Positions 14,280 to 34,200 are shown, counted from the stretch's first letter. The stretch: DNA of 64,000 bases from Octopus bimaculoides (GCF_001194135.2 NC_068982.1:84145111-84209110), one strand, 5' to 3'. Notes: a model not told the origin generated them from the sequence alone. Program-made: numbers and translations.

Positions 14280-14645
14280 CTTACGCTATGAATCCTAAAT
14301 ATCGGCCTTTTCCGTAAAAAGTGTCTTCGGCGATCTTTACCAAAGATCGGCCTTTTCCATAACACCCGCACGATTTTCACTACGGTGTTAGGGTTAGGGT
14401 TTTAGTGTCACGGTTAGAGTTTTAGGGTTACGGTTACGGTTAGGGACGGAATTCCCTAACCCTAATCCTAACTGTAAACCCTTCAAAAGAAATCGCGCTC
14501 TCTGTATCTCTTTCGCTTTTATGACGTCGTTTCCCTGTTTCTCTCCAACACTTTTTACGGAAAAGGCCGATCTTTAGTAAAGATCGCCGAAGACACTTTT
14601 TACGGAAAAGGCCGATATTTAGGACTCGTACCGTAAGATCGCCCC
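14280..14645. mobile_element. MITE with ~85-bp TIRs, internal telomere-like repeats and internal hairpin
   Basis: Left 'cttacgctatgaatcctaaatatcggccttttccgtaaaaagtgtcttcggcgatcttta' is the reverse complement of the right end at ~14545-14637. The left terminus is lost in an N gap. Confidence 0.85.
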
Positions 14646-14649
14646 AGTA

Positions 14650-15003
14650 TTTTAAAAAATCTAAGCTGTTAGAATATTTCTTTTATTTTTTTTGATTTCC
14701 AGTACTTCATGAAGGAAGAAATCAAGAACCACTGCCCTAAGCAAAACAATGAGGCCGAAGCACAGTGAATGAAAAACAATTCTTCCGCGAATGCTGAATG
14801 AGCTAAAACTAGAAAGTTCCCTCGAAAACCGACCGTTTGTGACGAGAACTGACCCCCATATCGAAAAAACAACTTCTAAAACTCTCGGTTAGCATTAATA
14901 TTTTAAATGAAAAAGTAACATTAAGAATGAAACGATTTATTCATAACCAAACAGGTACATGAATCTTCGAAGTTTGAAGGACGTCACAGTTTAAGTAGCT
15001 GAC
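14650..15003 (+). promoter_or_regulatory. Probable FAHD1 promoter/5'UTR region
   Basis: Non-repetitive stretch with several CpGs directly upstream of the ATG, including a CRE-like GGACGTCA near 14979. Assignment is by position only. Confidence 0.45.
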
Positions 15004-15059
15004 ATGTCGCGGTATCTTGAAATTTGTAGGAAAGTTCTTGCAATCGGTCGGAACTACAG
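15004..15059 (+). CDS. FAHD1: FAHD1 coding exon 1 (MSRYLEICRKVLAIGRNY + AG), phase-2 donor GTAAAG at 15060
   Basis: ATG at 15004 with an in-frame TAA upstream at 14992-14994. The translation contains the FAH-family 'K.V.AIGRNY' motif. It ends AG|GTAAAG and joins exon 2 in phase (AG+A = Arg), giving GRNYRDHAIELG. Confidence 0.93.
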
Positions 15060-15527
15060 GTAAAGTGGAATAAAATTAACGCACTAATATGTTTATTCAA
15101 AATAGTGGTAATCGCATACTTTAGCTTTTCTTTCCGTTTGGCAAAGTACAATTTTATGTAGGTATGTCAAACAAGCAAGTACACTTGTGTCGGGGTGGGG
15201 GGTACAACTCAGTAGTTATGCCCACTTGTGTAGGTATAACCAGATTTTAATGCTTAATTAGACGGGCGATAAATGTAAATTATACATGTGGTGCAGGTCG
15301 GGCATTGGCACAACATTTGTTTAAAATTATATCTTCTTTATTTGTTTAGGCATACACTCGTACACCCATTTGCTTCCTCCACACAAATACCAAGAAACAG
15401 AACACGTTCGCACAACACACCCATTAGCTTCCTCTTCCACTTCGATACGTCAAATAGATCAAGCACGCACACACATATACCGGAGTGTTTACAGTTGATA
15501 AGACTACACGTGCTCACGGTACACTAT

Positions 15528-15605
15528 TTTTCCCAGCTAAATGCTAGATTCAAATTTTTTTCTACTAAATGCTTAGAAGAAATGCTAGATGCAGTCTTAA
15601 AAATG
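15528..15605 (-). mobile_element. hAT subterminal fragment
   Basis: Reverse complement matches ~25215-25290 and the left subterminal region of the 41801 hAT. Confidence 0.6.
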
Positions 15606-16549
15606 GATGTACAAACAAAGGGGAGACACTTAGCAATAAATATACGAGAATTGAAAAATGCGCACGTTCAAAAGGCTTACAGATTGTCATAATAAACCTT
15701 AAAAAGTATGGGACTAGCATTGTTGCTCAAAAATATTGGAATCGCTATATGTTGTGCATTTTGCGGTATCTTAAAACGAAAAGAGACTCGTGTGAATTAT
15801 GTCACAATAATTATTAAATCGAGATTTTAATATAAAAATTTGAAAACGTACAAGATATGATCCTTAATTTCGAATAAGTAAATTCATTGTAATACTCTTC
15901 ATACCAAAGTATATAAAAAACACTGCTTGCAAATTACCATAATAATAAAAAATAAAAAAACTGGATTTATGATGAAGTCGAATCTATATAACAGCTTTAA
16001 CCTTTTTTACCTGGTTGGGTGGTTCTTCGTTTATTTGTTTTTAAGGTTATGGTTATTCGTGAGTAACTCGCAGGTTTTCTAACCAATACTCAAGAAATTA
16101 TGTAAATCTGACTCGTAAAGTATTATTCAATATTTATTTACTTTATTAAATTCAAATTCAATTGTTTAAACAGTATGATAAATAAAACAGGAGTGCTCTC
16201 CCATAGTTTACTTTTTTTTTTAGAAGGCATATGATAAAAGGCTTTTTCTAATTCGTTTTCTTCTAAGAGTTTACTTGTTGAGATGGATGACAAGTATTGA
16301 ATTTCTTAACTAATTCCTCAAACTACTCCAGACAGAATTTAGATAAATTATTTAAGGTCATGATAGAGAAAAATAGACACTGCAATGTCTTTTTCATGAG
16401 CGTGACAATAATTCAACACTACAAGACATGAGGCAGCCTAAAAGTCACTGGAAAATATCAGAAAACCTGGGTTTCCAGAAGCGTCAGAAACAATTTTTGG
16501 TCGAATTTGACTTCGTCTAAACTTGTATTTTAGCGCCAATAGAAAATTT

Positions 16550-16686
16550 GGTAATTTTACAGATTAACACCCACATGATTACCTAACCCTAACCTTAAAC
16601 ACTAACCCTAACACTAACCCTAAAACCCTAACCCTGACCCTAACACCCTAGTGAAAATCGTGCGGGTGTTAATCTGAAAAATTACC
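16550..16686. mobile_element. 137-bp Merlin-type MITE filled with CCCTAA-like repeats
   Basis: ~31-bp TIRs GGTAATTTT(A/T)CAGATTAACACCC, GG...CC termini and an exact 8-bp TSD GAAAATTT (16542-16549 and 16687-16694). Confidence 0.9.
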
Positions 16687-17456
16687 GAAAATTTTCACTA
16701 AACAACTCCAGTGTATTTCAAAACATATCTGCTTCGAAACTTTTTACTACACAGCGAAAATACGAAACCGAAATAGTTATAAGTAAAGATAATTCGCATT
16801 ATGATACACTATTATGCAAATTAAACAAATTATTTCTAAATTATTTTTGATTGATTATTTGTAAATTTATAAAAATTATCATTCATAGATTGAATTGTGA
16901 CGTAATAAATGACATTAGTATTTTGTACACAATTGTTTTGTTAAAATTGAGTATACAATAATTCAATTTAATTAATTTTTGGTACAACTTAATTTCGATN
17001 NNNNNNNNNNNNNNNNNNNNNNNNNNNNNNNNNNNNNNNNNNNNNNNNNNNNNNNNNNNNNNNNNNNNNNNNNNNNNNNNNNNNNNNNNNNNNNNNNNNN
17101 NNNNNNNNNNNNNNNNNNNNNNNNNNNNNNNNNNNNNNNNNNNNNNNNNNNNNNNNNNNNNNNNNNNNNNNNNNNNNNNNNNNNNNNNNNNNNNNNNNNN
17201 NNNNNNNNNNNNNNNNNNNNNNNNNNNNNNNNNNNNNNNNNNNNNNNNNNNNNNNNNNNNNNNNNNNNNNNNNNNNNNNNNNNNNNNNNNNNNNNNNNNN
17301 NNNNNNNNNNNNNNNNNNNNNNNNNNNNNNNNNNNNNNNNNNNNNNNNNNNNNNNNNNNNNNNNNNNNNNNNNNNNNNNNNNNNNNNNNNNNNNNNNGGA
17401 TTGTGTAGAAAAAAAAATTAAATAAAAAAAAGGGGTGTTTATGGTAGGGTACAAAA

Positions 17457-17560
17457 GGAAGTCTTGCCCACCCGGTGTTTAGAGTTAGGTTTAGAGTTGG
17501 GGCTAGGATTAGGGTTAGGGTTTTTGTTACGCCGAAAACGGGTGGTGTGTGTATTCTTCA
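17457..17560. repeat. Degenerate small repeat/MITE with TTAGGG-like core
   Basis: 'gtttagagttaggtttagagttggggctaggattagggttaggg'; the flank resembles the reverse complement of 546-580. Confidence 0.45.
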
Positions 17561-18214
17561 CCTCCGCCATAGAATGTACAGCATATAGTGATTCCAATAT
17601 TTTTGAGCAACAATGCTAATCCCATACTTTTTAAGGTTTATTATGACAGTCTGTAACCCTTTTGAGCGTGCACACTTTTCAATGAATTAGAGTTTCGTAC
17701 TTTTTAAGGCAATGCTTGTAATATTTTATATATGTACCGTATTTCTCCTAATGGTGTGGTAGACTCTAATAACCACCACCTGAACGCCAACCAATTGAAA
17801 TAGTGTGACTGTCACAATATTAAAAAATGTACGATACAATCGATAATAATTGTTGTATCATATAGAGAGATAAATGGTTGCAAGAATCTGGTCGAGTGAC
17901 ATGACTTTCCAGTATTATAATGAAAATTGCCATGGAAGCTGCAAATCCGACCAACAACCTCCAAAAAGTTAAAGAAATTGCAGTCATTCACCTCTGAGAT
18001 AATATACCTCAATGGTGGGACCAGATTCATATTATCCTAATAAATTCATAAATGCACTTAAGCTATTCAAATAAAGCACTGTATAGAGATAAAAAGTTAT
18101 ATCTCACCACCTCTGTCACATTTCCTGTCTGACCATCAAGCAAATGATTCATCAAATAATACTTGTTGCTTTATATTGGCCTTGAAAATTAATTTCATTT
18201 CGATTCAATTTAAT

Positions 18215-18842
18215 TCAATTTTTCCAAGAATAACAGGTAGTTGTTAAGCAGTTTACACAGGAAGCTATGTACTGCTTGGAAGAGACGGCATCATCAATGA
18301 TGGCCCATTTGTCTTGGTTGCGAACAATGCTGGTGTAGTAGCCAGAGTCTGCTCTAGTCAACATGTGCAACACTGAGCTGATCAATCGGTATCTCTGGTT
18401 GTAAATGTTCTGCTTATTCAGAGAATAATTCATCAGCTCCAAATTAACCCTGACCATCTGATTGTCTATATATTTGAATTTGTTCAAATAAACAACCAGG
18501 TAACACATAGTTTGGGAACGCATGGCTCACTCTACCAGTGTGCTTGGTGTCAATGCCACACAGACTGTACGTCCTGATAATTGAAGCTTCGTTTTTGAGC
18601 AAGCTCTTAAATTGTTGCCGACCACTAATAGGATGCAATATCAGATCAGACTCGAGGTCAGTTGTATTTGTGGAAGTGCCACAGCCGTTTGGTTGATGCA
18701 CAGTCACAGTTATTATTGTGTAATTTGGGGCAATTGGCCTCGTGGTTTCTAGTGCACCTGAGCAATGTATTCTCCTCAAACATGAACATATAGTGATGTC
18801 AAGGTTATCCATTTTATAGTGATAATGTAGATTTAATGACAC
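18215..18842 (-). pseudogene. Intronless, frameshifted ubiquitin-specific protease (peptidase C19) C-terminal domain remnant
   Basis: Joined frames read 'YSLCG...FPNY..LVVYLNKFKY...YRLISSVLHM...SGYYTSIVRNQDKWAIIDDAV'. This matches the USP 'L.I.LKRF', 'Y.L..V..H', His box (GHY degraded to GYY) and W..FDD motifs. Confidence 0.75.
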
Positions 18843-18869
18843 TATAATTTAGTCGGTATGAGAGAAAGA

Positions 18870-19308
18870 GGGGTCACCATCTTGTTCATAAAAACAAGAA
18901 AATAGAGATTCACGAGACGCTTGTAATAAGTCATAGCTTTTATTATTGGAGGTAATGCGTTAACATACAAGGTTAATTGAAGGAAAACTTATAACATTAC
19001 ATGAATATGTTCTGTTTGCAGTCACATGTCTCCCAGTAAGAAAGGTGAATGTGTGCACAAGTGGGCATAAACTGTGGCGATTTGACTCAATGCCAGCCTA
19101 AGGTTAGACAGCTACAGAGTGGTGCGAATTTAGAATTTCTTCCTTTATATAAGGGATAGACTGGAAGTCCCCAACTTTCACATAAACCGGAAGCTTCCAG
19201 AAAGGTCTCGAGCATTCTAGAAGCTTGAGAGAAATTACTCTCATTAAATCCCTTTTCTGTTTTGCTTGCCAACGTAGCTGCCAGGGATCACTATTTAACT
19301 CCCCCTTC
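18870..19308 (-). mobile_element. LTR (~18883-19298) with upstream PPT and downstream tRNA-Trp PBS
   Basis: On the minus strand: GAAGGGGGAG, then the LTR with TATATAAA (19144-19151) and AATAAA-like signal, ending ...GAACA, then aga TGGTGACCCC (complementary to the 3' end of eukaryotic tRNA-Trp). Confidence 0.7.
19189..19228. promoter_or_regulatory. Heat-shock elements within the LTR
   Basis: gGAAg-cTTCc-aGAAa (19189-19203) is a perfect 3-unit inverted nGAAn array. A second array, aTTCt-aGAAg-cTTGa, is at 19214-19228. The first lies ~40 bp upstream of the minus-strand TATA. Confidence 0.65.
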
Positions 19309-20919
19309 AGATGAGCAGTCGATAAGCAGAGTCATTGTAGTGATCCAGGGCAGATACAAAGCAAAACGAGGTAGCAGAAACATGTACTTGCAAAACAAGT
19401 AGTAAAATAGAAAAATCAATACATGCATCATGATAGATACTGAATATAATTGCAGAGTTTGGCACAGTAAACCTTTAGCTACACAGTTATGCACATCAAA
19501 TTAAATGCAAAACATGGCAAAATGAAAATACAATGTGAAAACATGCATGGGAACAGTGTTTGTGAATAGCGTTCTTTGTAAAAGAAATAACAAACAGTTT
19601 GTGTTTTAATACAAAGTTAAATGTACATAGTTCTGGATAATTTTTGTGTGAGTGCGACAGTACGCAGTAAAGTGTATGCATCATATTAGATATGTAACAC
19701 TACAAAAAGGAAGCTGAAGGAAGCTCTTCATAGCTTGCTGCTTGGGAAGGTGGTTTCCGCGAGATAGAGCAAGCAAAACTTGATGTGCATGCGTGATAGC
19801 TGACGTCCAGGAAACTGGAAATCACAGGATGCGAAAGTCAAGGTGTATGAGAGTGCAATGTTGGCTGTTGAGACATAAGCAGTACCAAAATTTAACCTGC
19901 AAGAGCAGTGGGTCGTTTGCAGAGGCTGAAAGGGTGTAGGTGCTAGAAAAACGACAGTGACTAGCAAAGTGAGTCAAACCATAAGGATGGCGGCAAAAAA
20001 AGGAAGTTCCAACATGCAAGAGACTTGGTGTTGATCAGGCAACAAAGGAAGAAAATGCACGGATCTGCATTCATAAAAGGTGGTTTGTGCATCCTACAAA
20101 CCAGAGAAGAAACGCATGACAGAAACACGTAAGGAGCTGTTTTTTGCCAGATGAAAATGGCTTGAGAAAAGCATTCAGCTAGAATAAACCTAAAAATGTT
20201 TGGGATTGGATAGCATGCGACAGATAGCATGTATGTGTGTATGTATGAACGTTGAGCAATAAAAAAATGTGCAATTGTAACTGCTGAAAACACTGTAAAA
20301 CAACATCGATTGCAGAGTCTGATGCAGTATTTCCCAGCGAAAGCTGTGCATTGAAGACTGAGCGTGCAAGGTGAGGTACTGAATAGAGGGCGTTTCACAG
20401 TGTTAAAAGGCATGTTACAAAATGGATGGAAGAAAAAATGTAACAAAATGAACAGAAAGAAATTGAAGCAGAAAAGTTTATGGTGAGGCTGAAAAAATAT
20501 GAAGGAAAGACAAGAAAACATGCAAAATGTTCAGTTCATTGAATAACTGTTCCAATGAATGCTGTTAAGAAATGCATGGTTGTTGAAAAGAAACGTCACA
20601 TTTTGGATTAGGAAGTTGTTTGAGGTGCCGTCCAACTGTGTGGTGTTCAGAGTGACTGAAATTTGCTGTATAAGGCTATAAAACCAGTTGCTGTACAGAA
20701 AATTGCACAGGAACGATTCGAAACTGGCATTGAAATCGTGGCAGTGGTGACATTAGCACTGTAGTCCTGTACGAAGGCTGAGACAGCGTTGATGATAACG
20801 CTGTGTGCATGGTTGTCGAAGTCTGGCCATGTGGAAAATTTGAGACAGGTGAATGCAATAGAGAACTGTTGAGATTTGGCGTGCACATCCACTGCGCATG
20901 CACAGAGTGGTAATTTCAC

Positions 20920-22080
20920 AGGAAAAACCAGCGAGGAAGATGAAGACGGATGCCATGTTGGAAAGACTCCAACTTGTATTTTTGGCACGAACCGTTGACA
21001 GTTGACATTGTGAGAGTAAATTACTTCAAAAGGAGATTATTTGAAAGGACACTATGTATTTCCTTGTCAGAAGAATGCATACTCTGTTAGGTACAAGTTC
21101 AAGGTGAAGAAAACGAATTCTAGAGGTTCAGAAATGCTAATGAAGAAATGTGGTCTAGAAATAATCTTGGCTATTTCTGTTCTGTCAGAGAGCGAATTGT
21201 AAAGTCGCCAAACATTAGATTAACTGTGGATTCGTCAGAGCATTATTACCACAATCTGCTCATGCTCTTCAAGCTTTGGCATGGCAAGGAAAAAGACTAG
21301 CTTGAAGGTTACAAGACTTATAGGAGTCCTTTGATCAGTGTGCTAATGATTTATTTGAAATGGTCAGGTTCTAGAATGTGCACAGGTGTATAGAGGATGT
21401 GCTGGAACATGACAAAAATATTCAAAGTGAATCTCAGACTGATCTCAATGAGGGCTATTCTTGTGGTGATCATATGGCAGATGAAAATGTTGATGTCGAT
21501 TTGTCTCACATGAGAAATGTCACTGAGGGTGCACTGAGTCATAAAGAAAGCCAACTGAATGACATGCAAAGAAAAATTTATGATGGTATTGTGGCCAGTA
21601 TTGAGAAACAAAACAATCACTGGGACATCAACGAACCTTATCCGCGATGTCATTGTGATGACTGTGCACAAGTTTTGAAATTTGTTTCTGGTATTGGTGA
21701 CATAGGCAAAAGTCCGGCTGATAAAATTCAGTACATGTACCAAAAAGACAATGGCCCAAGTGTAGTGATATCAGCACCAAGCTTTCCAACTAAATGGAAC
21801 AATTGTTCATCGATTGTTAAAACTCAAAGTGCAGCACAGCAAAACTCCTGTGTATGAGGAACTATCAAAAGACAATCTAAAACTGTTGTAGACAATGCTT
21901 CAGTATGTGAGACTGATTATAAATGATGAGGTTAGCATGGTCAGTCAATTGCAGCTGGCTTTTATTCACTTGAGATTGTGCCAACTGTTTGAATCAACAC
22001 AACAGAGTTCGCCTTTCGGACATATAAATGTGGTTGTCTTTGGTGATTTGTTTCAATTACCACGTGTTAGAGATGGTAAC
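20920..22080 (+). pseudogene. Helitron/Helentron Rep-helicase linker and PIF1 helicase motifs I-III
   Basis: 'EHYYHNLLMLFKLW...EGYKTY'; ORF 21378-21857 ('QLNDMQRKIYD', 'FVSGIGDIGKS'); ORF 21895-22107 ('LIINDEVSMVS', 'PFGHINVVVFGDLFQLP'). Confidence 0.92.
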
Positions 22081-22084
22081 TGGG

Positions 22085-23300
22085 CAAGTCTACTCCAATC
22101 CAAATAACGCTTTAAGAACACCCATAGAAATAGTGGCCAAGTAGTTTGTCAGCAGCTTCATATCGGCTGTTTCACGCTTGCCTATCAACTGAAGTCTGAC
22201 ACTCTTATACTTTGAATAAAAGGACTTGGATTTGTCAATCTCAGCCCAAATGCCTTCAGTGTCACTCTTTTCGGACTTTGTCTGATAATAGTAACATATC
22301 AGTTTAGAATCATGCTATCTTCACTGATGTACTGTATATCAACATTCACCTTCCAGACATACAGAACGAGAGGGTTATAGTCATTAATGGACTCTTCCCC
22401 CTGTTGTCTGTCAAGTTTGTAAAGTTTCTTGACAGTTCTGCTTTTGTGGCAAGACTTTATACTCTCGTCTACACTAAGCAAATAGAAATTTCAACAGGAC
22501 ATGGAAATCCAAATCTGCATCCGGTGTAAAATTGACTGTCCGAATAAATCTGTTTTCTGCAGGATCCACTACAGACATGTTATTGAAAATGTGACACCAA
22601 GTCCGACAAAACTGGACTTTCCACATTCGACGGAATATGACAAGTGATCATAGACTGTATAAAAGTCTGAATCATTCTCTTGTTGTCTCTGTCTATAACT
22701 GGGCCACCTTTAATCCACTATTTCATGTGAACATGTGGTGCATCTTTCATATGGTATTCCAATCTCCAAGTGTCAAATGACCTCCTCATAAAGGTGGCAA
22801 ATCAATGGTGGAAATGTTCACTAACAGCCACTACATCATCAGCACACAGCTCATTGGTGTGCTCTGTAGCAATGTTGGTATATCTGCGTTCAACTTTTCC
22901 AAAAATTCATCAGATCTGGCCAAAAGTTCTTTGCACAAGACAAAGTTAAGAACAAGTGGGCCAGGCCATATTTTTCGTCCATAGTCATCAAGTCTGAACA
23001 TTTTCTAGATCAAAATTGCTTGGAACCACGAACATTGGCCACCATCATATTCAAACTGCCCTCATTATCATCAAGCCACCTTTTAAACTTGCTTATAGTC
23101 ATGCAGTTGTTTTTGGTAGTCTTCATAATGGCATCATATATACTGGATTCAATACCTCTCTTGTTGGCTTTATCAACAATAAACATAAGATATTGTATAT
23201 CTCACTGAAATTTATGATTCAGTCTGTTTCTCAGGAACATGTAAAGGTTTACAGAGCTGAATGGTCTGCTATCCATGAACATGCCACATCCTAGCACCAC
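22085..23300 (-). pseudogene. Helentron Rep (HUH endonuclease) remnant
   Basis: Minus-strand translation gives 'VRGSKQF..SDLMTM..YG..HLFLTLSCA', 'WRLEYHMKDAPHVH..WIKGGP', 'GCRFGFP', 'INDYNPLVLYVWKVNVDIQYISEDS' and 'YEAADKLLGH'. Confidence 0.9.
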
Positions 23301-23699
23301 ACTTTTCACATATTTTGCACATAGAGCCCAGGGAGATAATTTTTTCAGATGCATAATTACGATTAGGATCATAATTAAATGTTACACTTTGCCATTGAAA
23401 TCATCTGTACTTCTGATGATTTTCTCTGGAAAGCTTTCTTCATTTTAATCATACATTTCGGTCACTTTCACTCTCTTGTTTTCTATTTATTTGTATTCCT
23501 TGTTTTTTTCAATTTTCTTGTGCTTTTTTATTTCTATCATTTTCCTTCTCTGAAATTTTATTTCCCGATCTTTATCACCTTCTTGTTCTCTTGTCGTCTT
23601 CTCCTATTCTCTCATTTTTCACAACCTAACTTTCCGATAGTTTTCACTTTCTTTTACAATTTTCACAATAAGTATTTGAATTCTCATTCTTTTGTCTTT

Positions 23700-24214
23700 T
23701 TTTAATGTCTTGTAATATTTTATTTCCTTCTACATTTCTTTCACGCTCATGATTGTTTATGGGAAAGAGAGCATCATCGTGACCACTGTCAAATATGTCA
23801 TTATATAACACTGAAATCTTCCTTTCTGTCAATGTTCGACCACAAACGGTGAACAAAGGAAGAATAATTTCATTGTTGTTCTTGTGATGAACCTGAATTG
23901 TGACATTGTACAATTCACTAATGGTAGCTAATTCAACATGACCATGTTCCATCCCTACTCGTGTATGCTTGGTATTCCTGCTTTGTACTTCCAATTATTG
24001 CATATGTATTATACGTACTCTTCCTGAAGAGTTCAGTAATTTCTGTTGTTTTTGAGCTAGAGTGACATAGCTCTGAACATACAGATACCCTCACCCATGA
24101 CTTTATTAAAGGGGTGAAATAATAAATTAATGTAATTGTTGAATATTTTTCAATAAATTCAGTAAGGGACTTCCCCTTCAGTTTAAACTTTAGATGGTTT
24201 TGTGAACAGAACAT
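23700..24214 (-). pseudogene. OTU-family cysteine protease (deubiquitinase) domain upstream of Helentron Rep
   Basis: Frameshift-joined 'YQAYTSRDGTW|GHVELATISELYNVTIQV...ISVLY....SGHDDAL' matches the OTU WG..EL.A.S..Y..I.V and GHY..L boxes. Same strand as Rep, separated by a charged linker. Confidence 0.8.
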
Positions 24215-24546
24215 GACAGAAAATTACAACACCCAAAGGGATAAGATACTAAGTGATAGCAATTTCCCCTTTAGAAATCTGTCTATCTAACTTTGCGATA
24301 GATGAATGAGTGATTATAATTTTGTGAATAATAAAAACAAAATTAATAAGGTACTTCACCTTCAGTGTTGACTTGAAACATCATCTTTGTGAAAAGAAAA
24401 GTGAAAGTATTTAGCAGACAATAACTTGTTTATTGTCTGTTCATAAATGGAAAAAGGAATGCTTTGGTTATTTCCAGATACTTTCGGTTTAAATGTTGTC
24501 AAATACTTGTCTATAGATTTGTAAGTGTGTGTATGTGTGTGTGTGC

Positions 24547-24598
<52 letters not shown>

Positions 24599-25199
24599 AA
24601 AACAGACAGAGTGAGAAACAGAGAGAAAGAGACACAAGCGAGACAGAAAGAGATTGAAAGCGTGTGCGTGTGTATCTTTGAATGACAACTGTATTAACGT
24701 TACTATCCCACTGCCACTCCATATTTGTCACTTACACAACTCTGTCCTCTCCTTCCTGATATCAGTTACATTCTCTATGCTACTGTTTCCCCTCACACTA
24801 TCGCTAAGGAAGACAAAAATGATGAACACAAAATCCTCGATTGAAGACAGCTACAAAGCAAACTAAAACTATTGCTCATTGGTTGATTGAATTGAAAATT
24901 AACCAATAAAACATTATTACCATGCAAACCTCAACGGCCCCTTTGCACTTTTATTGGCAAGCTAGACATGTATTGTCAGGACACGCAGAAAGACTTGACT
25001 ATAACATTCTGTTGTTAGTAACAACACGCCTGACAGATAGTTATATGCTCCTTACAATATTAGAGTGCAAGGCTTAGTGGTTAGGGTGTTGCACTTGCTA
25101 TCTAGCGATGGTGATTTCTCTTCCTTGACTGGGTGGTTTGTTGTGTTCATGATTGAGCAAAACCCTTCACCTCCAGTTGCTTTGCGACATATTCCAAAA

Positions 25200-26083
25200 G
25201 ATTGCTTTAACATTTTTAAGACCACATATAGCATTTTTTCTAAGCATTTAGTAGAAAAAACTTTATCTAGCATTTAGCAGGGAAAATAGCAGTTTGAGAA
25301 ATGTTGCTTTTATTGAAGAATTTCTTAATCCTAACCCAAATTTAGGCTACAGGTATGAGAGAAAGATGGCAAAAGTGATAATCAAGAAGACTAGAAAATA
25401 ATATTCATAAAAGAGCTCAACGATTTTTACTCAGCCTTTATAAAGAACTCAAGCAACATTTGCAAGAAAACTTCTCATGCTGAGGAGTATCAAATGTTTT
25501 TCAGTAGAGAAATACTTTGAGACATTTAAAAGAGCCAATTTTTCCTGTCATAGAAACAATGCATTTAGATGAAGAAAAAATTGCTTCAGTTGAAATTCAA
25601 TTTAATAGCATCCATTTTATTAAGTGAACAAATCCATCTAATACTGAGACATTCTGGTTAGAAGTTTTAGATTATAAAGATACCACTGGAGGAAATCCTT
25701 TTAGAGATGTTGCAAAATATTAATATTGCAAAACTCAAATGCCAAAATTGAACAGTTGTTCATCAAATCAAAACTGAAAAACAAAATACAGCTTCCTTTG
25801 CTTTCTGTAAAATATGACCTAAAAAGATATGGGAAGCACTGCAAAAACTTTGACCTTCCAAAACCTATATTTGACAAGATTGGGACCTTGAAAGTGAACA
25901 CATCTGTGAAATTAAAGAAATTATTTCTCAGTGCTGAATGTAATTAGGGAATGTAAATAGAGACGAATTTTTTATAATATAATTAGCCTTTAGTAAGTTT
26001 TTCTGTGCAGCATATTTTTAGCATTTTTGGCTTTTTTCTATTGAAATTTAGCATAAAATTGTGATTTTATTTTGGCAACATTA
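25200..26083 (+). mobile_element. Internally deleted hAT transposon remnant
   Basis: C-terminal dimerisation-region remnant ('FWLEVLDYKDTTGGNPF', 'NSNAKIEQLF') and right end 'tggcaacatta'. Homologous to 41801-43604. Confidence 0.75.
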
Positions 26084-26850
26084 ACTCTGACACATTTCAC
26101 ATAAATATCTACAAAAATAACTTGAAGTTTTGTAAAAGAATTGTGTCAGTATGTATGTGCCCACTAATTTTTACTACATTTTTTACATATAAATTGCCAT
26201 ATAATCGTAATCTACATCATCTGAAAGGTATTTGTAGAGATTTTCATTTGAAAAATAATTTTTCTGAAAGTTTTGAGGAAAGAAAATTGGTGAGGGCTCA
26301 ATTGTGTAGGCATGACAAGAATCAGAATCAACAACAAAGTATCCATTGTTTATTATTATATTCTGCAATATCAGTCATTTATATTTTTTTACATTGATGT
26401 AAATAATATATAATTGCACTAATATGTGACTCAGCTTTCCATTATAGACTGGCAAGTACAACTACAGGCCACTATACTTATAATTTTAAGTTGTTTTGAG
26501 CTACAAAGCTGGATGCCTTTTATTCTTTGAGGTCATTCCCACCTCTTTTTTCATAATTTTTCAGTTTTGACTTTCTTTTGAAAATTTCTTCAGTTTTATA
26601 AAGCAGGTGTCTTTGAAGAATCATAATCTTAGATGTTTAAAACATAAAGCTGGAAAAAAAATGAAAAGAAAGTCAAAAGTTAAAAATTACAAAACAATGA
26701 AGGATGAAAAAGATTGCCCCTTCCCTGTTATGATGCTTAAAACATATACATCTGAAGAATTATCTGGAGTAGATAATTAGGCTTGTTTATTTTGAGAAAT
26801 GTGTCACTTGTTATCATGCTTTTATGAAAAAAAAAAATACTGTAGCTATG

Positions 26851-26888
<38 letters not shown>

Positions 26889-27391
26889 GTATATATATAT
26901 ANNNNNNNNNNNNNNNNNNNNNNNNNNNNNNNNNNNNNNNNNNNNNNNNNNNNNNNNNNNNNNNNNNNNNNNNNNNNNNNNNNNNNNNNNNNNNNNNNNN
27001 NNNNNNNNNNNNNNNNNNNNNNNNNNNNNNNNNNNNNNNNNNNGGAGTCAGCACTGAATAACAACTTTCATTCATTTCAATTTGAGCATGAACACTTGAA
27101 GCAAATGTTTATTTTTTTCTTCTTTGGCTGTTCTAGAGGACTACTTGCAAAGTTTAAAGTTTCTTTTACAGAAAATATTAAATATTGAATTACAAGGAAC
27201 AAGTAAAATCCATTTTGTAACAGATATTTACTCCGCTATAAGCTACAAGAATGCAAAAAGAGTTCATTGTACTGCTATAGGAATAAACTCAAACTGGAAT
27301 ATCTAAGTTTAAAAGGTTTTTATCAACTAAAAATACAGTAATCTACAATACTAACAAAGATTGTTAAATTGTAAGCAAAACTAAACTTCAA

Positions 27392-27534
27392 TGCAATAAT
27401 AGTTTTATGCGGCGAGTTGCTACAGTCTCGACTAACTAGAAACTAACACTGAACACGTTGTGCCATAAACAGAACAGGCAAATATCAGCAGTCGAGACAA
27501 TCAAAGTCACGTGATCAAAACTAAAATCACAACA
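27392..27534 (-). mobile_element. 3' LTR of Ty3/Gypsy element (outer boundary uncertain)
   Basis: Begins TGTTGTG on the minus strand immediately after a PPT (forward ttttcccccct, 27535-27545). A second copy is at 34846-34986. Confidence 0.75.
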
Positions 27535-27659
27535 TTTTCCCCCCTAAAAAAAAAGAACAATTAACCAACAAAATGCAAAATACAAACATAATCACGAACC
27601 AATCACAACAATGTAATAATGAGGCATTTCATAAGTGTAACACATCATCAATCATAAAT

Positions 27660-30600
27660 TTAACCTATCAGGAACTTTTTTGCTCTGGATGAACACCAGT
27701 GCAAAGTAGTTTGAGGTTCTGGTTCTTGAGCTGGTGTAGGTGGGACAGAATCAATCATGGTATCTGAAAAATCACCATGGTGTTCATGCACTTGAGTAGG
27801 ATCAGTATCAGCAACATCAGTTTGATCCTTACTTGACTGATACTCCTCAGTTGTTTTTCCAGTAGGAGCTAAATCTCTAATGGACACAGTACTTTCATGT
27901 CCATCTGAGTACTGCACACTCCCATGGTTAGGGTTAATTTGTACCAATTGGGCTTCATCTACTAACGAGTCATACTTATTGCGTACATGTCATTTAACAA
28001 ACACTTTGTCAGGTCCTTGCATTAACCAAGTAGGAACAGAAACACCACACATAGAACGTCTAGGAAATTTAAAGAATCTCTCATATGGGGTCTCATTAGT
28101 TGCCATGCATAATAATGAACGTTGTGAATGTAAAAGTTCTAGAAGCATGACTTCCCATTGAGAAACTGGTAAATTTCTGCTACGTAAGGCCAATTTAATG
28201 GAATTCCATATCACTCCATTAGACCTTTCACATTGAATGAGTAATTGCTATATCCATATCGTACAGAAATTGTTTAAGTTCTTTAGATACAAAACATTTA
28301 GCATTATCACTATGAATAACAGCAGGAAATCCGAAAAGATTTAACAAAACCTTCAAATGACTAATAACGGAATGAGCACTAGTATCAGTACATGGAAAAA
28401 TAAACGAAAAATGTGAATACTCATCCACAACAGTTAAAAAATAATGGTTCTTCGACACTGAAGGTAGGGGTCTTTTAAAATCAATACTCAATCTTTCAAA
28501 TACTTGAGTAGATTTAATTACTGACGAAACAGAGGTTTTAGTAAAGCAAGGCTTCACCTCACAACATATTACACAATTATTAGTTATATGCTTTACATCA
28601 TCTACAGAATATGGTAAATTCTTAACTTTATATAATGAAACAATCATGTGATCCCAGGATGACACAGTGCTGCATGAACATGGTACAGCTCATTATCAGT
28701 CGTAGCTGCACAATAGGTACACGATAAAGCATCAGATGCAACATTAAACTTGCCTTGGCAGTAAATGATATCAAATTTATATTGGGATAGTTTGATTCGC
28801 CAACGCATTATCTTTTTGTTTTTAGGTTTACTGCGCTTTTGACAATTAAACATAAAAGCAACACTGTTTTGATCAGTTATTAATGTGAAGTTACGTCCAA
28901 GAAGAAAATGAGACCATTTTCTCACAGATTCTACAATCGTTGTCACCTCTTTTACAATACAAGAATAACGATGCTCGCTTGGGTTGAGGGTTCTTGAAAA
29001 AAATGCAACTGGCTTTCCATTTTGGTGTAAAATGCCAGATATAGCTACCTCTGGTGCATCTGTTTCTATTGAGAAAGGAAGGCTCTCCTCAATCACTTTT
29101 AAAGTAGCATTTGCTAAATCATCTCATAAAGTTTTTAAACTTGATGAGGCTTGTTTATTCAAAGGAAAATATTTAGTATCAACCAACGGTTTTATGTTGT
29201 CAGAGAATTTTGGAATCCAATTAGAATACGCAAATAGACCAACAATTCGACTCAATGCTTTGTGGGTAATAGGAATAGGTAGTTCTAGTAAGGGTTTTAC
29301 TCAGTCAGGGTCAGGTTTCAAGTTACCATTTTGAATTTCATAGCCAAGCAATCGAATCAGTGTAGTGCTGTAAATGCATTTGGCATCATTAAAAGTTAAA
29401 TTACAGTCTTTAGCAACTTGAAGAAAAAGTTTTAAATTTTGATCATACTCTTCCTTCGATTTACCACACACAGTTATGTTGTCGATATATGCAAAAGTAG
29501 CTCTACAATTATGGCTCTTGATTATATTGTTGATCACTTGCTGGAAACAGGGCACTGCATTTGTAGGTCCAAAAGCAATACATTTGCTTTGATACAATTT
29601 TCCCAGTGCTTCAAAAACTGTGTAAAGTCGATCTTCAACTGGAATCTCAACTTGATGATACGCACTTTTGGGATCCAGTGTGCTAAAATAATTAAATTGA
29701 GCTATTTTTGTGACCATGTAATGCATATTTGGCAGTGGATATCCATTTAATTGTGTAAACTTATTTATAGTCTCACAATAATCAATACACAGTCTCTTGC
29801 AATGATTTTCTCCTGATATTTCCAACATTTGGGCTCGCCAGAAAGAAACACTGGGTTCAATTACCCCTTCTGCCAGATCTTGGCTTATAGTATCAGCAAT
29901 AAATGTTTCATAATTGGCGGACTGTCTTCTCGATTTCATAACTATGGGTTTACAGTCAAGAGTTTAAATTTTCAAACAACTTAGTTGTAATTTCACTTTT
30001 AATGCAATTTAGAGCTCCCAAATGTAACGAGGGCTTTTTGCTGTCAAAGGTAATTTGTACATGTTGATGCTGTTTTAAGAAATTTTGTCCTAAAATTATA
30101 TCTACAAACAAATTAAGTACCACCAGCTTTACTTGCTCGTAAATTCTTCTTTGAAGTTCAATTGAACCCATAGAATAACCGTCGCTTTGGGAACAATTTC
30201 CATTGACAGCCATGTTAATTTCATTCCTTTCGGACTTCACCACCAATTTGTTTTTCTTTGCAAAGTCTTTGCTAATATGATTCATAGTAGAGCTGGTATC
30301 AATCAAAGCAAATGCTTTCACACCATCAACTGTTATTGTATAATTAACTTTAGTAGCAGCTCCACCTTGACATAAAAACACAGTTATCAAGAGCTGCTAA
30401 TGTCTTGAGTGGCATTCTTTAGCAAAATGACCAAAATATCCACATTTGTAACACTTGCTCCACTTAGCAGGACACTTAAACCTCAAGTGAAAGTCATTAG
30501 ATCCACAAAAGGTGCAGGATTTTCAAGTTCGTTTTGTTGCTGCACAAGCTGTGTTTCCGTCAGGAATTGAGATTTTGTCTTCTTCACGTGGAATAAACGT

Positions 30601-31219: not shown

Positions 31220-34200
31220 CATCATCATCATCATCGTCGTTTAACGTCTGCTTTCCATGCTAGAATGGGTTGAACAGTTTGACTGAGGACTGGCGAGCCA
31301 GAAGGCTGTACCATATGTGCTACCTGCACAGGAGCCAGTCCGGCAGCACTGGCAATGACCTCGCTTGAATGTTGTTTTTCACATGCCACCAGGACATGTG
31401 CCAGTAAGGTGACGCTGGCAACAATCACGCTCAAATGGTGCTTTTTACGTGCCACCAGCACGGGAGCCAATCCGTGGCCCTGGCAACGATCACGCTCGGC
31501 TGTGCTTTTAACATTTCACTGGCACGAGTGTCAATTAGGTGGTACTGTCATCGGCCACATCAGCGATTTTGATTTTGATTTCGCTTGCCTCAGTAGGTCT
31601 TTGCAAGCAAAGTTTGTTGTCCAATGAATGAGGGGTATTCATAAGTGGCCTGGTTACACCCCATGCTTGGATGTGCTTTTAACATTCCACTGGCACAAGT
31701 GCCAGTCAGGTGGTACTGTCATCGGTCATATCAGCAATTTTGATTTTGATTTCACTTGCCTCAATAGGTCTTCGCAAGCAAAGTTTATTGTCCAATGAAT
31801 GAGGGGTACTCATAAGTGGACTGGTTACACCCACTGGCATAGGCCATGGGCTATGGTCTCACTTGGCTTGCCGGGTCTTCTCAAGCACAGCATATCTCCA
31901 AAGGTCTCGGTCACTAGTCATTGCCTCAGTAAGGCCCAATGTTCAAAGGTCGTGCTTCACCACCTCATCCCAGGTTTTCCTGGGTCTACCTCTTCCACAG
32001 GTTCTCTCAACTGCTAGGGTGTGACACTTTTTCACACAGCTGTCCTTGTTTATTTGCAACACATGACCATACCAGCACAGTTGTCTCTCTTGCACACCAC
32101 ATCTGATGCTTCTTAAATCCAACTTTTTTCTCAGGGCGCTTACATTCTGTTGTGTATGCACATTGACATTACACATCCCAGAGTATACTGACTTCATTTC
32201 TTGCAAGCTTACGCATGTCCTCAGCAGTCATAGCCTATATTTCACTGCCATGTAGCATGGTTGTTTGTACACATGAGTCATACAGTCTACCTTTTACTCT
32301 GAGCAAGAGGCCCTTTGTCGCCAGCAGAGGTGGGAGCTCTCTCAACTTTGCCCAGGCTATTCTCATTCTAGCAGCTACAGAGTATCCACCCCCGCTACTG
32401 ACTTGTTCCCCTTGGTAATAGAAGCTATCAATTACTTGTAGTTTTTCTCTCTGGAATGTGACAGAAGTTGTCTCTGCACATTTTCAGTGTTTATAGCACC
32501 TGAACATATGCCACATACAAAAACTATCTTCCCAGTTAGCCTTCCTTTGATATTGCTGCACCTCTTATGTGTCCATAGCTTACATTGGCTACATCTTATG
32601 GAATTTCTACCTACACCTTTTCTACAGATTGAGCAGGGCCATCTACCTGAAAGGATTTGTGGTTTGTCTGCCTTCCTACTTATTAAGACTTTGGTTTTAG
32701 CTAAGTTGATTCTAAGGCCCTTCGATTCTAATCTTTGGTTCCACACCTGAAACTTTTCTTCTAGTTCTGATAGTGACTCAGCAATTAGAGCAAGGTCATC
32801 AGCACATAGGAACTCCCAGGGGCATCCTGTCTTGAATTCCTCTGTTATTGCCTGGAGGACTATGATGAATAAGAGGGGACTGAGGACTGATCCTTGATGG
32901 ACCGCTACCCCGACCTGGAATTCTTCACTGTACTCGTTACCAACCCTCACCTTACTGACAGCGTCTCCGTACATGGCTTGCACAGCTCTCGCTAACCATT
33001 CATCTATCCCTAGTTTCCTCATTGACCACCAGATAAGGGATCGGGGGTCCTTGTCAAAGGCTTTCTCCATGTCAACAAAAGCCAGGTACAGAGGTTTATC
33101 TTTGGCTAAGTATTTCTCCTGCAGCTATCTTACCAGAAATAGCATCAGTGGGTCTTTTCCTTGGCACGAACCCAAACTGCATCCCATCTAGACTGACTCT
33201 CTTATTTCATTACCTGATCCAACAACTTGATACCTCTGTAATTACTTGTATCTAAAGCGTCATCTTTACCTTTGTAGCAGTTGACTATAGTGCTGCTGCA
33301 CCAGTCATTGGATATAACTCCTTCATGTATCACCTGGTTAACTATAAGGGTGACTAGGTGATACATGAAGGAGTCATAGCCAATGACTGGTGTAGCAGCA
33401 CCATAGTCAACTGCTACAAAGGTAAAGGTGACGCTTTAGATACAAATAATTACAGAGGTATCAAGTTATTGGATCAGGTAATGAAGAGACTATACAGGTC
33501 ACTAGGCTATAGCCAACACTGCCAGATATTTTGAGCATCTCTGCGGTGATTCCTGATGGGCTGGGGGCTTTTCCTGTCTTCACACTCTTAATTGCTCTAT
33601 CTACCAAGGTACTGTCAATTCGGATAGCTGGTCCCTCTGTTGGGTTGGTATTTGGCAGATTCTCTTTCTCCCATTCATTCTCTTTATTTAGTAACCTTTC
33701 ATAGTGGCGTCTCCAAACCTCTCTCTTTGCAGCTTCGTTTAATGCAAGTGAACCATCATTCATGTGGACACATTTCTCTCCCACAACATCATGATTCTCT
33801 CTCACACACTGTCTTGCAACACGAAATACTTCAAGTCTTTGATCCTCATGGTGCAGAACATTGGCAAATTTTTTTCATATCTGCTTCCCCTCTGGCTAAA
33901 TAAACTTGTCTCCTAGCTTCCCTTCTGGCAGTCTGATACACTTCCCTGCTACCACTGTTCTTCCAGTCCTTCCAAGCCTGTTTTTTTTCCCTAATGGCCG
34001 TGAACAACATTGTTCCGCCACCACGTTACCTTGGGTCGAGATGGGACTTTGCACCATCCACAGATCTGGTCAGTAGCCCTCAGCAGGTTGTTCCATAGAA
34101 ACCTCCAGTTGTCTTCCACATCATGTGATGCTATATCCTCCTCTATTTCGTCTGAAGCTTGAAGTAATACGTCTCTAAATCTTTGTCCATTCGCAGGATC

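What the first reader, a model, noticed from the sequence alone, without database searches (positions are those of the whole stretch)
18215..24214. Helentron locus carrying two different deubiquitinase folds (OTU in-frame region plus a neighbouring USP)
Seen: within ~6 kb lie Helentron Rep and PIF1 remnants, an OTU domain directly upstream of Rep on the same strand, and an intronless USP (C19) domain on that strand further downstream. Known: OTU proteases occur in some Helitron/Helentron RepHel proteins. Inference: the USP may be second cargo of the same element. A rolling-circle transposon with two DUB classes would suggest a module that counters ubiquitin-based silencing or degradation. I do not recall USP as standard Helitron cargo. 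All parts here are dead, so the interest lies in the family rather than this copy. An LTR sits between USP and helicase, so linkage is unproven.
Basis: partly seen in the sequence, partly recalled or inferred. Interest (0 to 1): 0.7.

Follow-up and report, generated by a model that had tools for sequence, protein, structure and literature searches.

The report
Dead Helitron-like transposon carrying two deubiquitinases
This is a broken, rearranged octopus copy of a rolling-circle (Helitron-like) transposon whose transposase carried an OTU protease domain in front and a USP deubiquitinase domain fused behind the helicase. The USP really belongs to the element, but USP-bearing Helitron-like elements were already reported in 2024.

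Summary
All four coding remnants are real. On the minus strand lie OTU (24101-23752), Rep (23291-22082) and the C-terminal ~60% of a USP (18824-18215). The PIF1 N-terminal half lies on the plus strand (21129-22080).

The USP is a C-terminal in-frame domain of the RepHel transposase, not loose cargo. Three uninterrupted ORFs from distant organisms read DUF6570 / Helitron_like_N / PIF1 / UCH, with the catalytic Cys and His conserved. Three further cephalopod copies carry helicase and USP remnants side by side. One of them (L001) shares both element ends with the window and has both OTU and helicase-USP.

Corrections:
- The helicase piece is inverted in this copy.
- The helicase C-terminal half and the USP N-terminal half are replaced by 2.3 kb of unassignable DNA. 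No LTR evidence was found.
- No AP endonuclease is present, so this is an HLE2-type element and not a Helentron in the strict sense.
- The element spans about 15644/17666 to 25038.

Novelty is modest. HELIANO (NAR 2024) lists UCH as a stable HLE2 domain, and Helentrons with two DUB classes (VTD plus OTU) are known. What may be new is the OTU+USP pairing and the in-frame USP fusion. The pairing rests on two degenerate copies.

The parts
24102..25038 (-). 5' non-coding region of the element, containing an (AG)n microsatellite at 24550-24632. Shared sequence with L001 starts at about 25038.
   Evidence: Collinear blastn matches: L001 8419-8548 to window 25045-24916, and L001 8551-9614 to window 24757-23751 (82.9% over 1070 nt). 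Sequence upstream of the boundary differs between the two copies.
23752..24101 (-). OTU cysteine-protease (deubiquitinase-fold) domain remnant, spread over three reading frames with stops. Cys box GEGICMFRAMS at 24098-24063, WGG-like GHVELATISELYN at 23943-23905, His box SGHDDALFPINN at 23787-23752.
   Evidence: Pfam OTU scores 26.7 bits, E 8.5e-6, on the frame-joined translation. The L001 orthologous piece scores 37.6 bits, E 3.7e-9, covering profile positions 7-128 of 128. PDB sequence hits are OTUD3, OTUD5, OTUD1 and OTU1 at E 7.5e-5 to 1e-3.
23292..23751 (-). Lys/Glu-rich low-complexity linker in the OTU frame (8 stops), ending in a CxxC motif (MCKICEKCGARMW, 23322-23284). Positions 23750-23351 are absent from L001.
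   Evidence: Translations. L001 position 9614 maps to window 23751 and L001 9612 to window 23350. Reading it as a linker or zinc-finger start is inference.
22082..23291 (-). Rep (HUH endonuclease / Helitron_like_N) remnant in three frames. HUH-type motif DAPHVHMK at 22744-22721, CRFGFPCPV at 22519-22493, NDYNPLVLYVWKVNVDIQY at 22385-22329, Tyr-motif region YVTIIRQS at 22298-22275, RYEAADKLLG at 22165-22136.
   Evidence: Pfam Helitron_like_N E 6.2e-10. tblastn with P0002, P0003, P0021 and P0052 gives 30-54% identity.
21129..22080 (+). Inverted segment holding the Rep-helicase linker (YYHNLLMLFKLWHGKE, 21244-21291) and the N-terminal half of the PIF1 helicase. Walker A at 21681-21713, motif II at 21913-21942, motif III at 22030-22068.
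   Evidence: Pfam PIF1 E 6.5e-7. tblastn: P0021 residues 1509-1602 map to 21781-22071 on the plus strand. In L008 and L009 the same two blocks are collinear with Rep, so the inversion is specific to this copy. Breakpoints are 21129 and 22080/22082.
18825..21128 (.). Unassigned 2.3-kb spacer. It replaces the helicase C-terminal half and the USP N-terminal half (about 510 codons of the canonical ORF).
   Evidence: No Pfam hit in six frames. No repeat pair. No match elsewhere in the window or in loci L001-L012 by blastn or tblastx.
18215..18824 (-). C-terminal ~60% of a USP (peptidase C19, Pfam UCH) domain in three frames. The zinc-ribbon region (QQFKSLLKNEASIIR) is at 18617-18573. The His box reads ADSGYYTSIVRNQDKW (18352-18305), so the catalytic His is replaced by Tyr. 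Stop codon at 18215-18217.
   Evidence: the search for homologous proteins gives P0001 at E 9e-56, 63% identity. tblastn maps residues 243-416 of the L001 ORF to 18824-18296. P0021 residues 2116-2244 map to 18611-18204. Pfam UCH E 4.2e-5.
17666..18214 (-). 3' non-coding region shared with L001 and L008, ending in the left arm of a palindrome (ACTAGAATTGAAAAATGCGCA...).
   Evidence: L001 10549-11794 matches window 18787-17566 (82.4%). L008 11822-12179 matches window 18043-17666 (82.6%). In L008 the palindrome is a short hairpin with dG -8 kcal/mol, z -3.7.
15644..17683 (-). Possible 3' extension: two ~111-nt inverted arms (17683-17573 and 15760-15650) around a loop with TTAGGG-like arrays and an N gap. 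The outer arm end (...CAATTCTCGT, 15644) is where the window, L001 and L008 all diverge into different flanks.
   Evidence: Inverted repeat I1, 92% complementary. Collinear L001 matches: L001 11826-12040 to window 16999-16751, and L001 12455-12772 to window 15985-15640. Whether this is the element's own terminus or a nested repeat is unresolved.

Best explanation
The locus is one dead, rearranged copy of a cephalopod family of HLE2-type Helitron-like rolling-circle transposons.

The ancestral transposase read, 5' to 3': N-terminal OTU domain, linker / zinc-finger (DUF6570-like) region, HUH Rep endonuclease, PIF1 helicase, and a C-terminal USP deubiquitinase. The USP sits where true Helentrons carry an AP endonuclease.

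Transposition is assumed to follow the established Helitron scheme. Rep nicks the 5' end, the 5'-to-3' helicase peels off one strand up to a 3' hairpin, and a circular intermediate reinserts. This step is known from Helitron biology and was not tested here.

The USP, and here also the OTU, most likely removes ubiquitin from the transposase itself or from host factors at the transposition site. That would stabilise the transposase or blunt a ubiquitin-dependent host response. This is inferred from two things: conserved Cys/His catalytic motifs in intact relatives, and the demonstrated DUB activity of the analogous VTD domains of zebrafish Helentrons.

In this copy the linker plus helicase N-half is inverted. 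The helicase C-half and USP N-half are lost to 2.3 kb of unrelated DNA. Every domain carries stops or frameshifts, and the USP catalytic His is mutated. Nothing here is functional.
For: Shown:
1. Single uninterrupted ORFs with DUF6570 + Helitron_like_N + PIF1 + Pif1_2B + UCH exist. These are P0021 (2245 aa, UCH 75.9 bits), P0052 (2746 aa) and P0026/P0061. Their contigs L007 and L012 carry them as one gene each.
2. P0001 starts with helicase motif VI (YVALSR). Searching it against 1.84e9 representatives returned only 55 hits. Twelve of them span both the helicase C-terminus and the USP. 38 have UCH, 15 Pif1_2B and 13 UvrD_C_2.
3. Alignment A2 shows conserved YVALSR...EYNRLR, then SCYANS (Cys box), QQDA, two CxxC pairs and SGHY...W..D. 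The profile hits USP12/USP46 structures at E 4e-24.
4. Cephalopod copies:
- L001 has OTU at 9218-9613 and a 416-aa ORF with UvrD_C_2 + UCH. It is collinear with the window on both sides of an internal deletion, at 82-83% identity.
- L008 has Rep end, linker, helicase C-terminus, USP N-half and 3' region on one strand.
- L009/L010 carry Rep, helicase and USP within 3.6 kb.
5. Flanks beyond about 25038 and beyond 15644 differ between the window, L001 and L008. These are separate insertions, not a segmental duplication.
6. The window's Rep scores about 200-218 bits against USP-bearing relatives and about 87 bits against an EN-bearing Branchiostoma Helentron.

Literature:
- UCH is stably included in HLE2 elements (PMC11417382).
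- Helitron VTD domains are active DUBs and often co-occur with OTU (PMC9741609).
Against: - No intact OTU-RepHel-USP ORF was found. The OTU+USP pairing rests on two degenerate octopus copies (window and L001).
- OTU was not detected in any of the non-cephalopod RepHel-USP relatives examined.
- DUF6570 is not detectable in the window itself.
- HELIANO states that UCH and 16 other accessory domains lie in ORFs separate from RepHel, which differs from what I see.
- Element termini are defined from only two or three copies. The 3' end is ambiguous (17666 or 15644).
- DUB activity and its role in transposition are entirely inferred.
- The inversion could in principle be an assembly error.
Confidence: 0.8

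Rival explanations
1. Chimeric element. An OTU-bearing Helentron-like 5' part and a USP-bearing HLE2 3' part were joined by nested insertion or recombination. The composite then spread as a non-autonomous unit. No transposase ever carried both DUB folds.
For: - Only the window and L001 show both domains.
- Other RepHel-USP relatives lack OTU.
- A different HLE2 protein (P0004) carries OTU after the helicase and not before Rep.
- These copies are rich in deletions and inversions.
Against: - OTU is contiguous with and upstream of a Rep whose nearest relatives are the USP-bearing lineage.
- The OTU-to-Rep-start junction is shared by the window and L001 (L001 9612-9681 matches window 23350-23281).
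- Both copies share the same 5' and 3' non-coding regions.
Confidence: 0.15
2. The USP is a host gene fragment or processed pseudogene. It was captured once by, or lies by chance next to, a Helitron copy in the octopus lineage.
For: - Helitrons are known gene capturers.
- The window remnant is intronless and dead.
- NCBI annotates the L001 relative as an ordinary gene (LOC128249111).
Against: - The same helicase-USP fusion is found at 21-35% identity in full-length ORFs from unrelated samples. Any capture was therefore ancient and the domain has been retained.
- Canonical host USPs barely register with P0001.
- LOC128249111 begins inside helicase motif VI and has Phe at the catalytic Cys position.
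Confidence: 0.03
3. Same element, different function. The OTU and USP domains act mainly as cis-acting processing proteases that cut the giant transposase into Rep/helicase subunits, as viral papain-like and OTU proteases do. Deubiquitination of host or transposase ubiquitin conjugates would not be their main role.
For: - Thomas et al. (PMC4067079) raised cleavage of Rep/Helicase/Endonuclease subunits as a possible role for Helentron OTU.
- The domains sit at the two ends of a polypeptide of more than 2000 aa.
Against: - Helitron VTD domains tested biochemically cleave K48, K63 and K11 diubiquitin and Ub/NEDD8 probes (PMC9741609).
- USP enzymes need a ubiquitin-like C-terminus at the scissile bond, and I saw no ubiquitin-like module in P0021 or P0052.
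Confidence: 0.1

Closest known systems
UCH-bearing HLE2 Helitron-like elements (HELIANO subgroups c and d; Li et al., NAR 2024, PMC11417382)
   Same: - HLE2-type Rep with DUF6570 in relatives, and a PIF1 helicase.
- A Pfam UCH (USP/C19) domain downstream of RepHel.
- No AP endonuclease.
   Different: - HELIANO found these mostly in lungfish and axolotl, and describes UCH among domains encoded in ORFs separate from RepHel.
- Here the USP is in frame with the helicase in three uninterrupted ORFs and in two cephalopod remnants.
- The cephalopod copies also have an N-terminal OTU.
- Placement of this family in subgroups c/d was not tested.
Helentrons carrying VTD (Herpes_teg_N-like) plus OTU domains (Erven et al., Nat Commun 2022, PMC9741609)
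   Same: - A rolling-circle transposase carrying two unrelated papain-fold DUB classes.
- OTU upstream of Rep.
- A proposed role in protecting transposition proteins from ubiquitin-dependent degradation.
   Different: - The second DUB there is a VTD and those elements keep the C-terminal AP endonuclease.
- Here the second DUB is a USP at the C-terminus and there is no endonuclease.
- VTD activity has been demonstrated. USP and OTU activity here has not.
Classical Helentron / Helitron2 with OTU ORF (Poulter 2003; Thomas et al. 2014, PMC4067079)
   Same: - OTU-like cysteine protease associated with RepHel.
- An internal microsatellite and a 3' palindrome.
- Frequent internally deleted derivatives.
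- Flanks compatible with T/T insertion.
   Different: - The defining AP endonuclease of Helentrons is absent.
- The 11-13 bp subTIRs were not identified.
- A USP domain is present.
P0004-type HLE2 protein (contig L002)
   Same: - Related Rep and helicase (42-54% identity to window pieces).
- A DUB-fold domain placed after helicase motif VI.
   Different: That domain is an OTU (residues 1019-1105, 37.7 bits) and not a USP. This suggests the C-terminal slot can be filled by different DUB folds.

Membership tests
Helitron-like element (HLE, rolling-circle transposon) | HUH-type Rep domain (Pfam Helitron_like_N) | tested here: met
   Pfam E 6.2e-10, 40 bits. Rep motifs are located. tblastn to RepHel proteins is.
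Helitron-like element (HLE, rolling-circle transposon) | PIF1-type helicase downstream of Rep in the same ORF | tested here: inconclusive
   PIF1 is present (E 6.5e-7), but in this copy it is inverted relative to Rep and truncated. It is collinear with Rep in L008 and L009, and in one ORF in P0021, P0052 and P0061.
Helitron-like element (HLE, rolling-circle transposon) | Defined left and right termini with a 3' hairpin, shared among copies | tested here: inconclusive
   The 5' homology boundary is at about 25038. The 3' palindrome ACTAGAATTG...CAATTCTAGT is seen in L008 (z -3.7). In the window and L001 the arms are 0.85-1.9 kb apart. Only two or three copies were available.
Helentron (strict sense) | AP endonuclease (Exo_endo_phos) fused C-terminal to RepHel | tested here: not met
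   No Exo_endo_phos in six frames of 17500-25000, nor in P0021, P0052 or P0026, which end just after the USP.
HLE2 group (Helentron / Helitron2 clade) | DUF6570 upstream of Rep (HELIANO marker), and Rep closer to HLE2 than to HLE1 | tested here: inconclusive
   DUF6570 was not detected in the window. It is present in all closest full-length relatives: P0002, P0003, P0021, P0052 and P0026. No formal tree was built.
HLE2 group (Helentron / Helitron2 clade) | Insertion between T and T | tested here: inconclusive
   The flanks can be read as T|ATCTGT...CTAG|T in the window, L001 and L008. That is weak evidence in AT-rich DNA.
UCH-bearing HLE2 (HELIANO subgroups c/d) | Pfam UCH domain at a conserved position downstream of RepHel | tested here: met
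   The USP follows helicase motif VI in L001, L003, L004, L008, L011, P0021, P0052 and P0061.
UCH-bearing HLE2 (HELIANO subgroups c/d) | Phylogenetic placement of RepHel within subgroups c/d | not tested
   The HELIANO sequences and supplement were not available.
USP / peptidase C19 deubiquitinase | Cys box, QQD box and His box in a USP fold | tested here: met
   This holds for the family. Alignment A2 shows SCYANS, QQDA and SGHY. Pfam UCH reaches up to 80 bits. PDB hits are USP12/USP46 at E 4e-24.
USP / peptidase C19 deubiquitinase | Catalytic residues intact in the window copy | tested here: not met
   The Cys-box half is missing. The His box reads GYY at 18352-18305. Three reading frames and stops are involved.
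OTU deubiquitinase | OTU domain with Cys and His motifs | tested here: met
   Pfam OTU scores 26.7 bits for the window (frame-joined) and 37.6 bits for L001. The Cys (GEGICMFRA) and His (GHDD) motifs are present. PDB OTUD3 and OTUD5 hit at E about 1e-4. The ORF is broken, so no activity is expected.
   No direct repeats of 40 nt or more in 14300-30000. No Pfam hits in 18825-21128. No similarity to anything on hand. A solo LTR cannot be excluded without a repeat library.

The most novel reading that the evidence does not exclude
Cephalopods host an HLE2 family whose single transposase polypeptide carried two unrelated deubiquitinase folds flanking RepHel: OTU at the N-terminus and USP at the C-terminus. 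The USP occupies the slot that holds an AP endonuclease in Helentrons and an OTU in another HLE2 lineage (P0004). With VTD+OTU Helentrons, this would make DUB activity a recurrent, interchangeable and probably required accessory function of HLE2 transposition, recruited independently at least three times.
Probability: 0.5. Interest if true: 0.5.

Novelty: new variant of a known kind. Interest (0 to 1): 0.33.

Why it matters
This settles that the USP here is transposon-encoded and not a host pseudogene. It refines the 2024 survey-level report of UCH in HLE2 elements in two ways: the USP is fused in frame to the helicase, and its catalytic motifs are conserved across very distant copies.

If the OTU+USP pairing is ancestral, it adds a third DUB combination to rolling-circle transposons. 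That would strengthen the case that these elements need deubiquitination to transpose, which is testable with the intact relatives found here.

There is also a practical point. O. bimaculoides LOC128249111 is annotated as a gene but is a transposon fragment.

The window copy itself is dead and has no functional consequence.

Tried and rejected
- Six-frame translations of 17500-25000 with stops masked as X, scanned as 2500-aa proteins, found only Helitron_like_N and PIF1. OTU and UCH needed short ORFs or frame-joined pieces.
- I guessed a degenerate USP Cys box in the ORF 19272-19087 ('GFNESNFSQASRMLETF'). I rejected it because tblastn with P0001 and the L001 ORF shows no homology upstream of 18824.
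- The LTR search found no direct repeats, no self-matches, no coding signal and no match to related loci. The spacer stays unassigned.
- I looked for OTU in non-cephalopod RepHel-USP elements: the N-termini of P0021 and P0067's partner, and the upstream ORFs of L011 and L012. None was found.
- I looked for OTU in L008 and L009. L008 is 5'-truncated and L009 ends inside Rep.
- The HELIANO supplementary tables, which would give host species and co-occurrence of UCH and OTU, are not held.
- Organism names for the Logan, ENA and JGI contigs were not obtainable. DNA for P0066 (GCA_041442895.1) could not be fetched.
- I first suspected that the window and L001 were segmental duplicates. I rejected this because their flanks on both sides differ.
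- The word-index protein search with the alignment profile added only a few new fusions (P0065-P0067) and no OTU-containing protein.

Full report
**What is in the window**

The window is AT-rich eukaryotic DNA with N gaps. Its relatives identify it as octopus-like.

On the minus strand I confirm three coding remnants.

- **OTU.** The raw ORF 23994-23644 gave no Pfam hit. Joining the three frames that carry the Cys box (MGEGICMFRAMS, 24098-24063), the GHVELATISELYN motif (23943-23905) and the His box (SGHDDALFPINN, 23787-23752) gives Pfam OTU at 26.7 bits, E 8.5e-6, above the cutoff. The equivalent piece of a related octopus locus scores 37.6 bits and hits the OTUD3, OTUD5 and OTUD1 structures.
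- **Rep.** Helitron_like_N scores E 6e-10. Homology to RepHel proteins runs from 23291 to 22082 through the HUH and Tyr motif regions.
- **USP.** The ORF 18523-18215 alone scores UCH at 23.7 bits, E 4e-5. The frame-joined remnant 18824-18215 finds one protein among 5.8 billion. This is O. bimaculoides LOC128249111 (P0001), a UCH protein, at E 9e-56 and 63% identity.

The PIF1 remnant is real (E 6.5e-7) but lies on the plus strand at 21129-22080, convergent with Rep.

**The USP belongs to the transposase**

P0001 begins MAYVALSRARKL..., which is helicase motif VI, and runs straight into the USP.

Its genomic locus L001 holds a 416-aa ORF with both UvrD_C_2 (helicase C-terminus, 29.6 bits) and UCH (29.8 bits). 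An OTU domain sits about 180 bp upstream on the same strand.

L001 is an internally deleted copy of the same element as the window.
- L001 8419-9681 matches window 25045-23281. This covers the 5' region, OTU and the start of Rep, at about 83% identity.
- L001 10549-11794 matches window 18787-17566. This covers the USP and the 3' region, at 82% identity.
- The sequences outside these blocks differ.

OTU and USP lie inside shared element ends in two separate insertions.

An exhaustive phmmer search of P0001 against 1.84 billion representative proteins returned only 55 hits.
- Twelve hits align across both the helicase tail and the USP.
- Pfam on all 55 gives 38 with UCH, 15 with Pif1_2B, 13 with UvrD_C_2 and none with OTU.
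- Three are giant single ORFs: P0021 (2245 aa), P0052 (2746 aa) and P0026/P0061. Each reads DUF6570, Helitron_like_N, PIF1, Pif1_2B, UCH, and ends just after the USP. They are carried as one uninterrupted gene on contigs L007 and L012.

Further contigs show Rep, helicase and UCH in order on one strand: L003, L004-L006 and L011.

The alignment of 13 helicase-USP junctions shows conserved YVALSR...EYNRLR, a basic linker, then SCYANS (catalytic Cys), QQDA, two CxxC pairs and SGHY...W..D. The profile hits USP12/USP46 structures at E 4e-24.

The USP is therefore an old, retained, probably active C-terminal domain of this transposase lineage. It is not a host pseudogene.

**More cephalopod copies and the state of this one**

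- **L008** is from chromosome OX597826.1 of GCA_951406725.2, which I believe from memory to be Octopus vulgaris. It carries Rep end, linker, helicase C-terminus, USP N-half (interrupted by a SINE-like insert) and the 3' region, all on one strand.
- **L009/L010** are Logan contigs. They carry Rep, linker and helicase on one strand. The USP N-half is inverted right after the helicase tail.

In both L008 and L009, the blocks matching window 22074-23238 and 21129-22073 are collinear. In the window they are opposed. The window copy therefore has an inversion with breakpoints at 21129 and 22080/22082, with about 170 bp lost at a junction.

About 510 codons of the canonical ORF have no counterpart in the window. 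These are the helicase C-half and the USP N-half, including the Cys box. In their place is 18825-21128, which matches nothing:
- no Pfam domain;
- no repeat in the window;
- no similarity to any fetched locus.

The surviving USP His box reads GYY instead of GHY. Every domain is split across frames with stops.

**Ends of the element**

The window and L001 start to align at about 25038 (TATCTGTCAGGC...). The 5' region holds an (AG)n microsatellite at 24550-24632.

At the 3' side all three copies share sequence up to ACTAGAATTGAAAAATGCGCA.
- In L008 this closes immediately into a hairpin (ACTAGAATTG / CAATTCTAGT, dG -8 kcal/mol, z -3.7) followed by unrelated flank.
- In the window and L001 the two arms are about 111-125 nt long. 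They are separated by 1.8 kb (window) and 0.85 kb (L001) of collinear sequence. The copies diverge only after the outer arm, at window 15644.

The element therefore spans 25038 down to 17666, or more likely down to 15644. The flanks are compatible with a T/T target, but this is weak evidence.

**Classification**

The nearest full-length relatives all have DUF6570, HELIANO's marker for HLE2. The window's Rep scores more than twice as high against USP-bearing relatives as against an endonuclease-bearing Branchiostoma Helentron.

No AP endonuclease is present in the window or in the intact relatives. The defining feature of a Helentron in the strict sense is therefore not met. This is an HLE2-type element in which a USP occupies the C-terminal position.

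**What was already known**

- HELIANO (PMC11417382) lists UCH among 20 domains stably included in Helitron-like elements. It is almost exclusive to HLE2 and enriched in subgroups c and d, which came mostly from lungfish and axolotl. The paper places UCH among the domains encoded in ORFs separate from RepHel.
- Erven et al. (PMC9741609) showed that many Helentrons carry VTD deubiquitinase domains. 121 of them also have OTU, and the VTDs cleave K48, K63 and K11 chains. The authors proposed that Helitrons benefit from DUB activity supplied by different classes.
- Thomas et al. (PMC4067079) describe OTU in Helentrons.

So 'a rolling-circle transposon with two DUB classes' and 'USP in a Helitron-like element' are each published. 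What I do not find described is the OTU+USP pairing, a cephalopod representative, and the in-frame helicase-USP fusion.

**Limits**

- The pairing rests on two degenerate copies.
- None of the non-cephalopod RepHel-USP proteins I could examine has an OTU.
- A different HLE2 protein (P0004) has an OTU after the helicase, in the USP's position. This hints that the C-terminal slot accepts different DUB folds. It also keeps a chimera scenario alive.

**Mechanism, and which steps are shown**

- Shown: the domain order, the fusion, and conservation of the catalytic motifs.
- From established Helitron biology: Rep nicking, helicase-driven strand peeling to a 3' hairpin, and a circular intermediate.
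- Inferred: the USP and OTU deubiquitinate the transposase or local host factors, stabilising it or evading a ubiquitin-dependent response. A processing-protease role is a weaker alternative.

**Verdict**

The labels 'Helentron' and 'LTR' are not supported, and the novelty is modest.

Noticed in passing
window 21129-22080 (breakpoints 21129 and 22080/22082): The linker plus helicase N-half is inverted relative to Rep in this copy only. L008 and L009 have the two blocks collinear, and about 170 bp is missing at a junction. This could be a real rearrangement or a misassembly.
   Followed up: partly
L009 121-946 and L010 121-946: In two Logan contigs from different runs, the USP N-half (plus strand, 121-593) is inverted directly after the helicase C-terminus (minus strand, 946-577). 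This is a second, different inversion in the same family.
   Followed up: partly
L002 4475-7927 (protein P0004): A related HLE2 helicase protein carries an OTU domain at its C-terminus (residues 1019-1105, 37.7 bits), in the position the USP holds in this family. The window's OTU is weakly similar to it (tblastn E 0.003 at 24101-23994).
   Followed up: partly
L001 10001-11041 (O. bimaculoides LOC128249111): This NCBI gene model is a transposon fragment. It starts inside helicase motif VI, has Phe at the catalytic Cys position, and ends prematurely within the His-box region compared with the window.
   Followed up: yes
window 17683-17573 and 15760-15650; L001 11671-11797 and 12645-12772; L008 12157-12189: The 3' palindrome of the element is a 10-bp-stem hairpin in L008. 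In the window and L001 it is a pair of ~111-125-nt inverted arms separated by 1.8 kb and 0.85 kb. It is unclear whether the long form is the true terminus, a 3' transduction or a nested foldback element.
   Followed up: partly
window 14382-14445, 16582-16650, 17479-17522 (also 585-696): Short degenerate telomere-like (TTAGGG/CCCTAA)n arrays lie inside and beside the loop between the 3' inverted arms, next to the N gap 17000-17397.
   Followed up: no
window 15528-15605 and 25211-25286 (also 41833-41912): A ~78-nt repeat in inverted orientation lies just outside both ends of the element (90% identity). It is absent from L001, so it is probably an unrelated SINE- or MITE-like repeat and not a terminal inverted repeat.
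   Followed up: partly
window 34087-34810, 37941-38735, 56191-56937; L008 9034-9840: Another ~0.8-kb dispersed repeat family is present three times in the window (78-86% identity to L008). In L008 it abuts the 5'-truncated end of the Helitron-like copy.
   Followed up: no
L011 1767-2591: In a JGI metagenome contig, a 274-aa ORF about 2 kb upstream of the Rep gene has a weak UCH match (E 0.004). It may be the tail of a preceding tandem copy of the same element.
   Followed up: no
L004, L005, L006 (protein P0067): An identical 663-aa helicase-USP protein occurs in three independent samples (two Logan runs and one ENA metagenome), each downstream of a DUF6570/Rep gene. This suggests a young, possibly active RepHel-USP element in an unidentified organism.
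   Followed up: no
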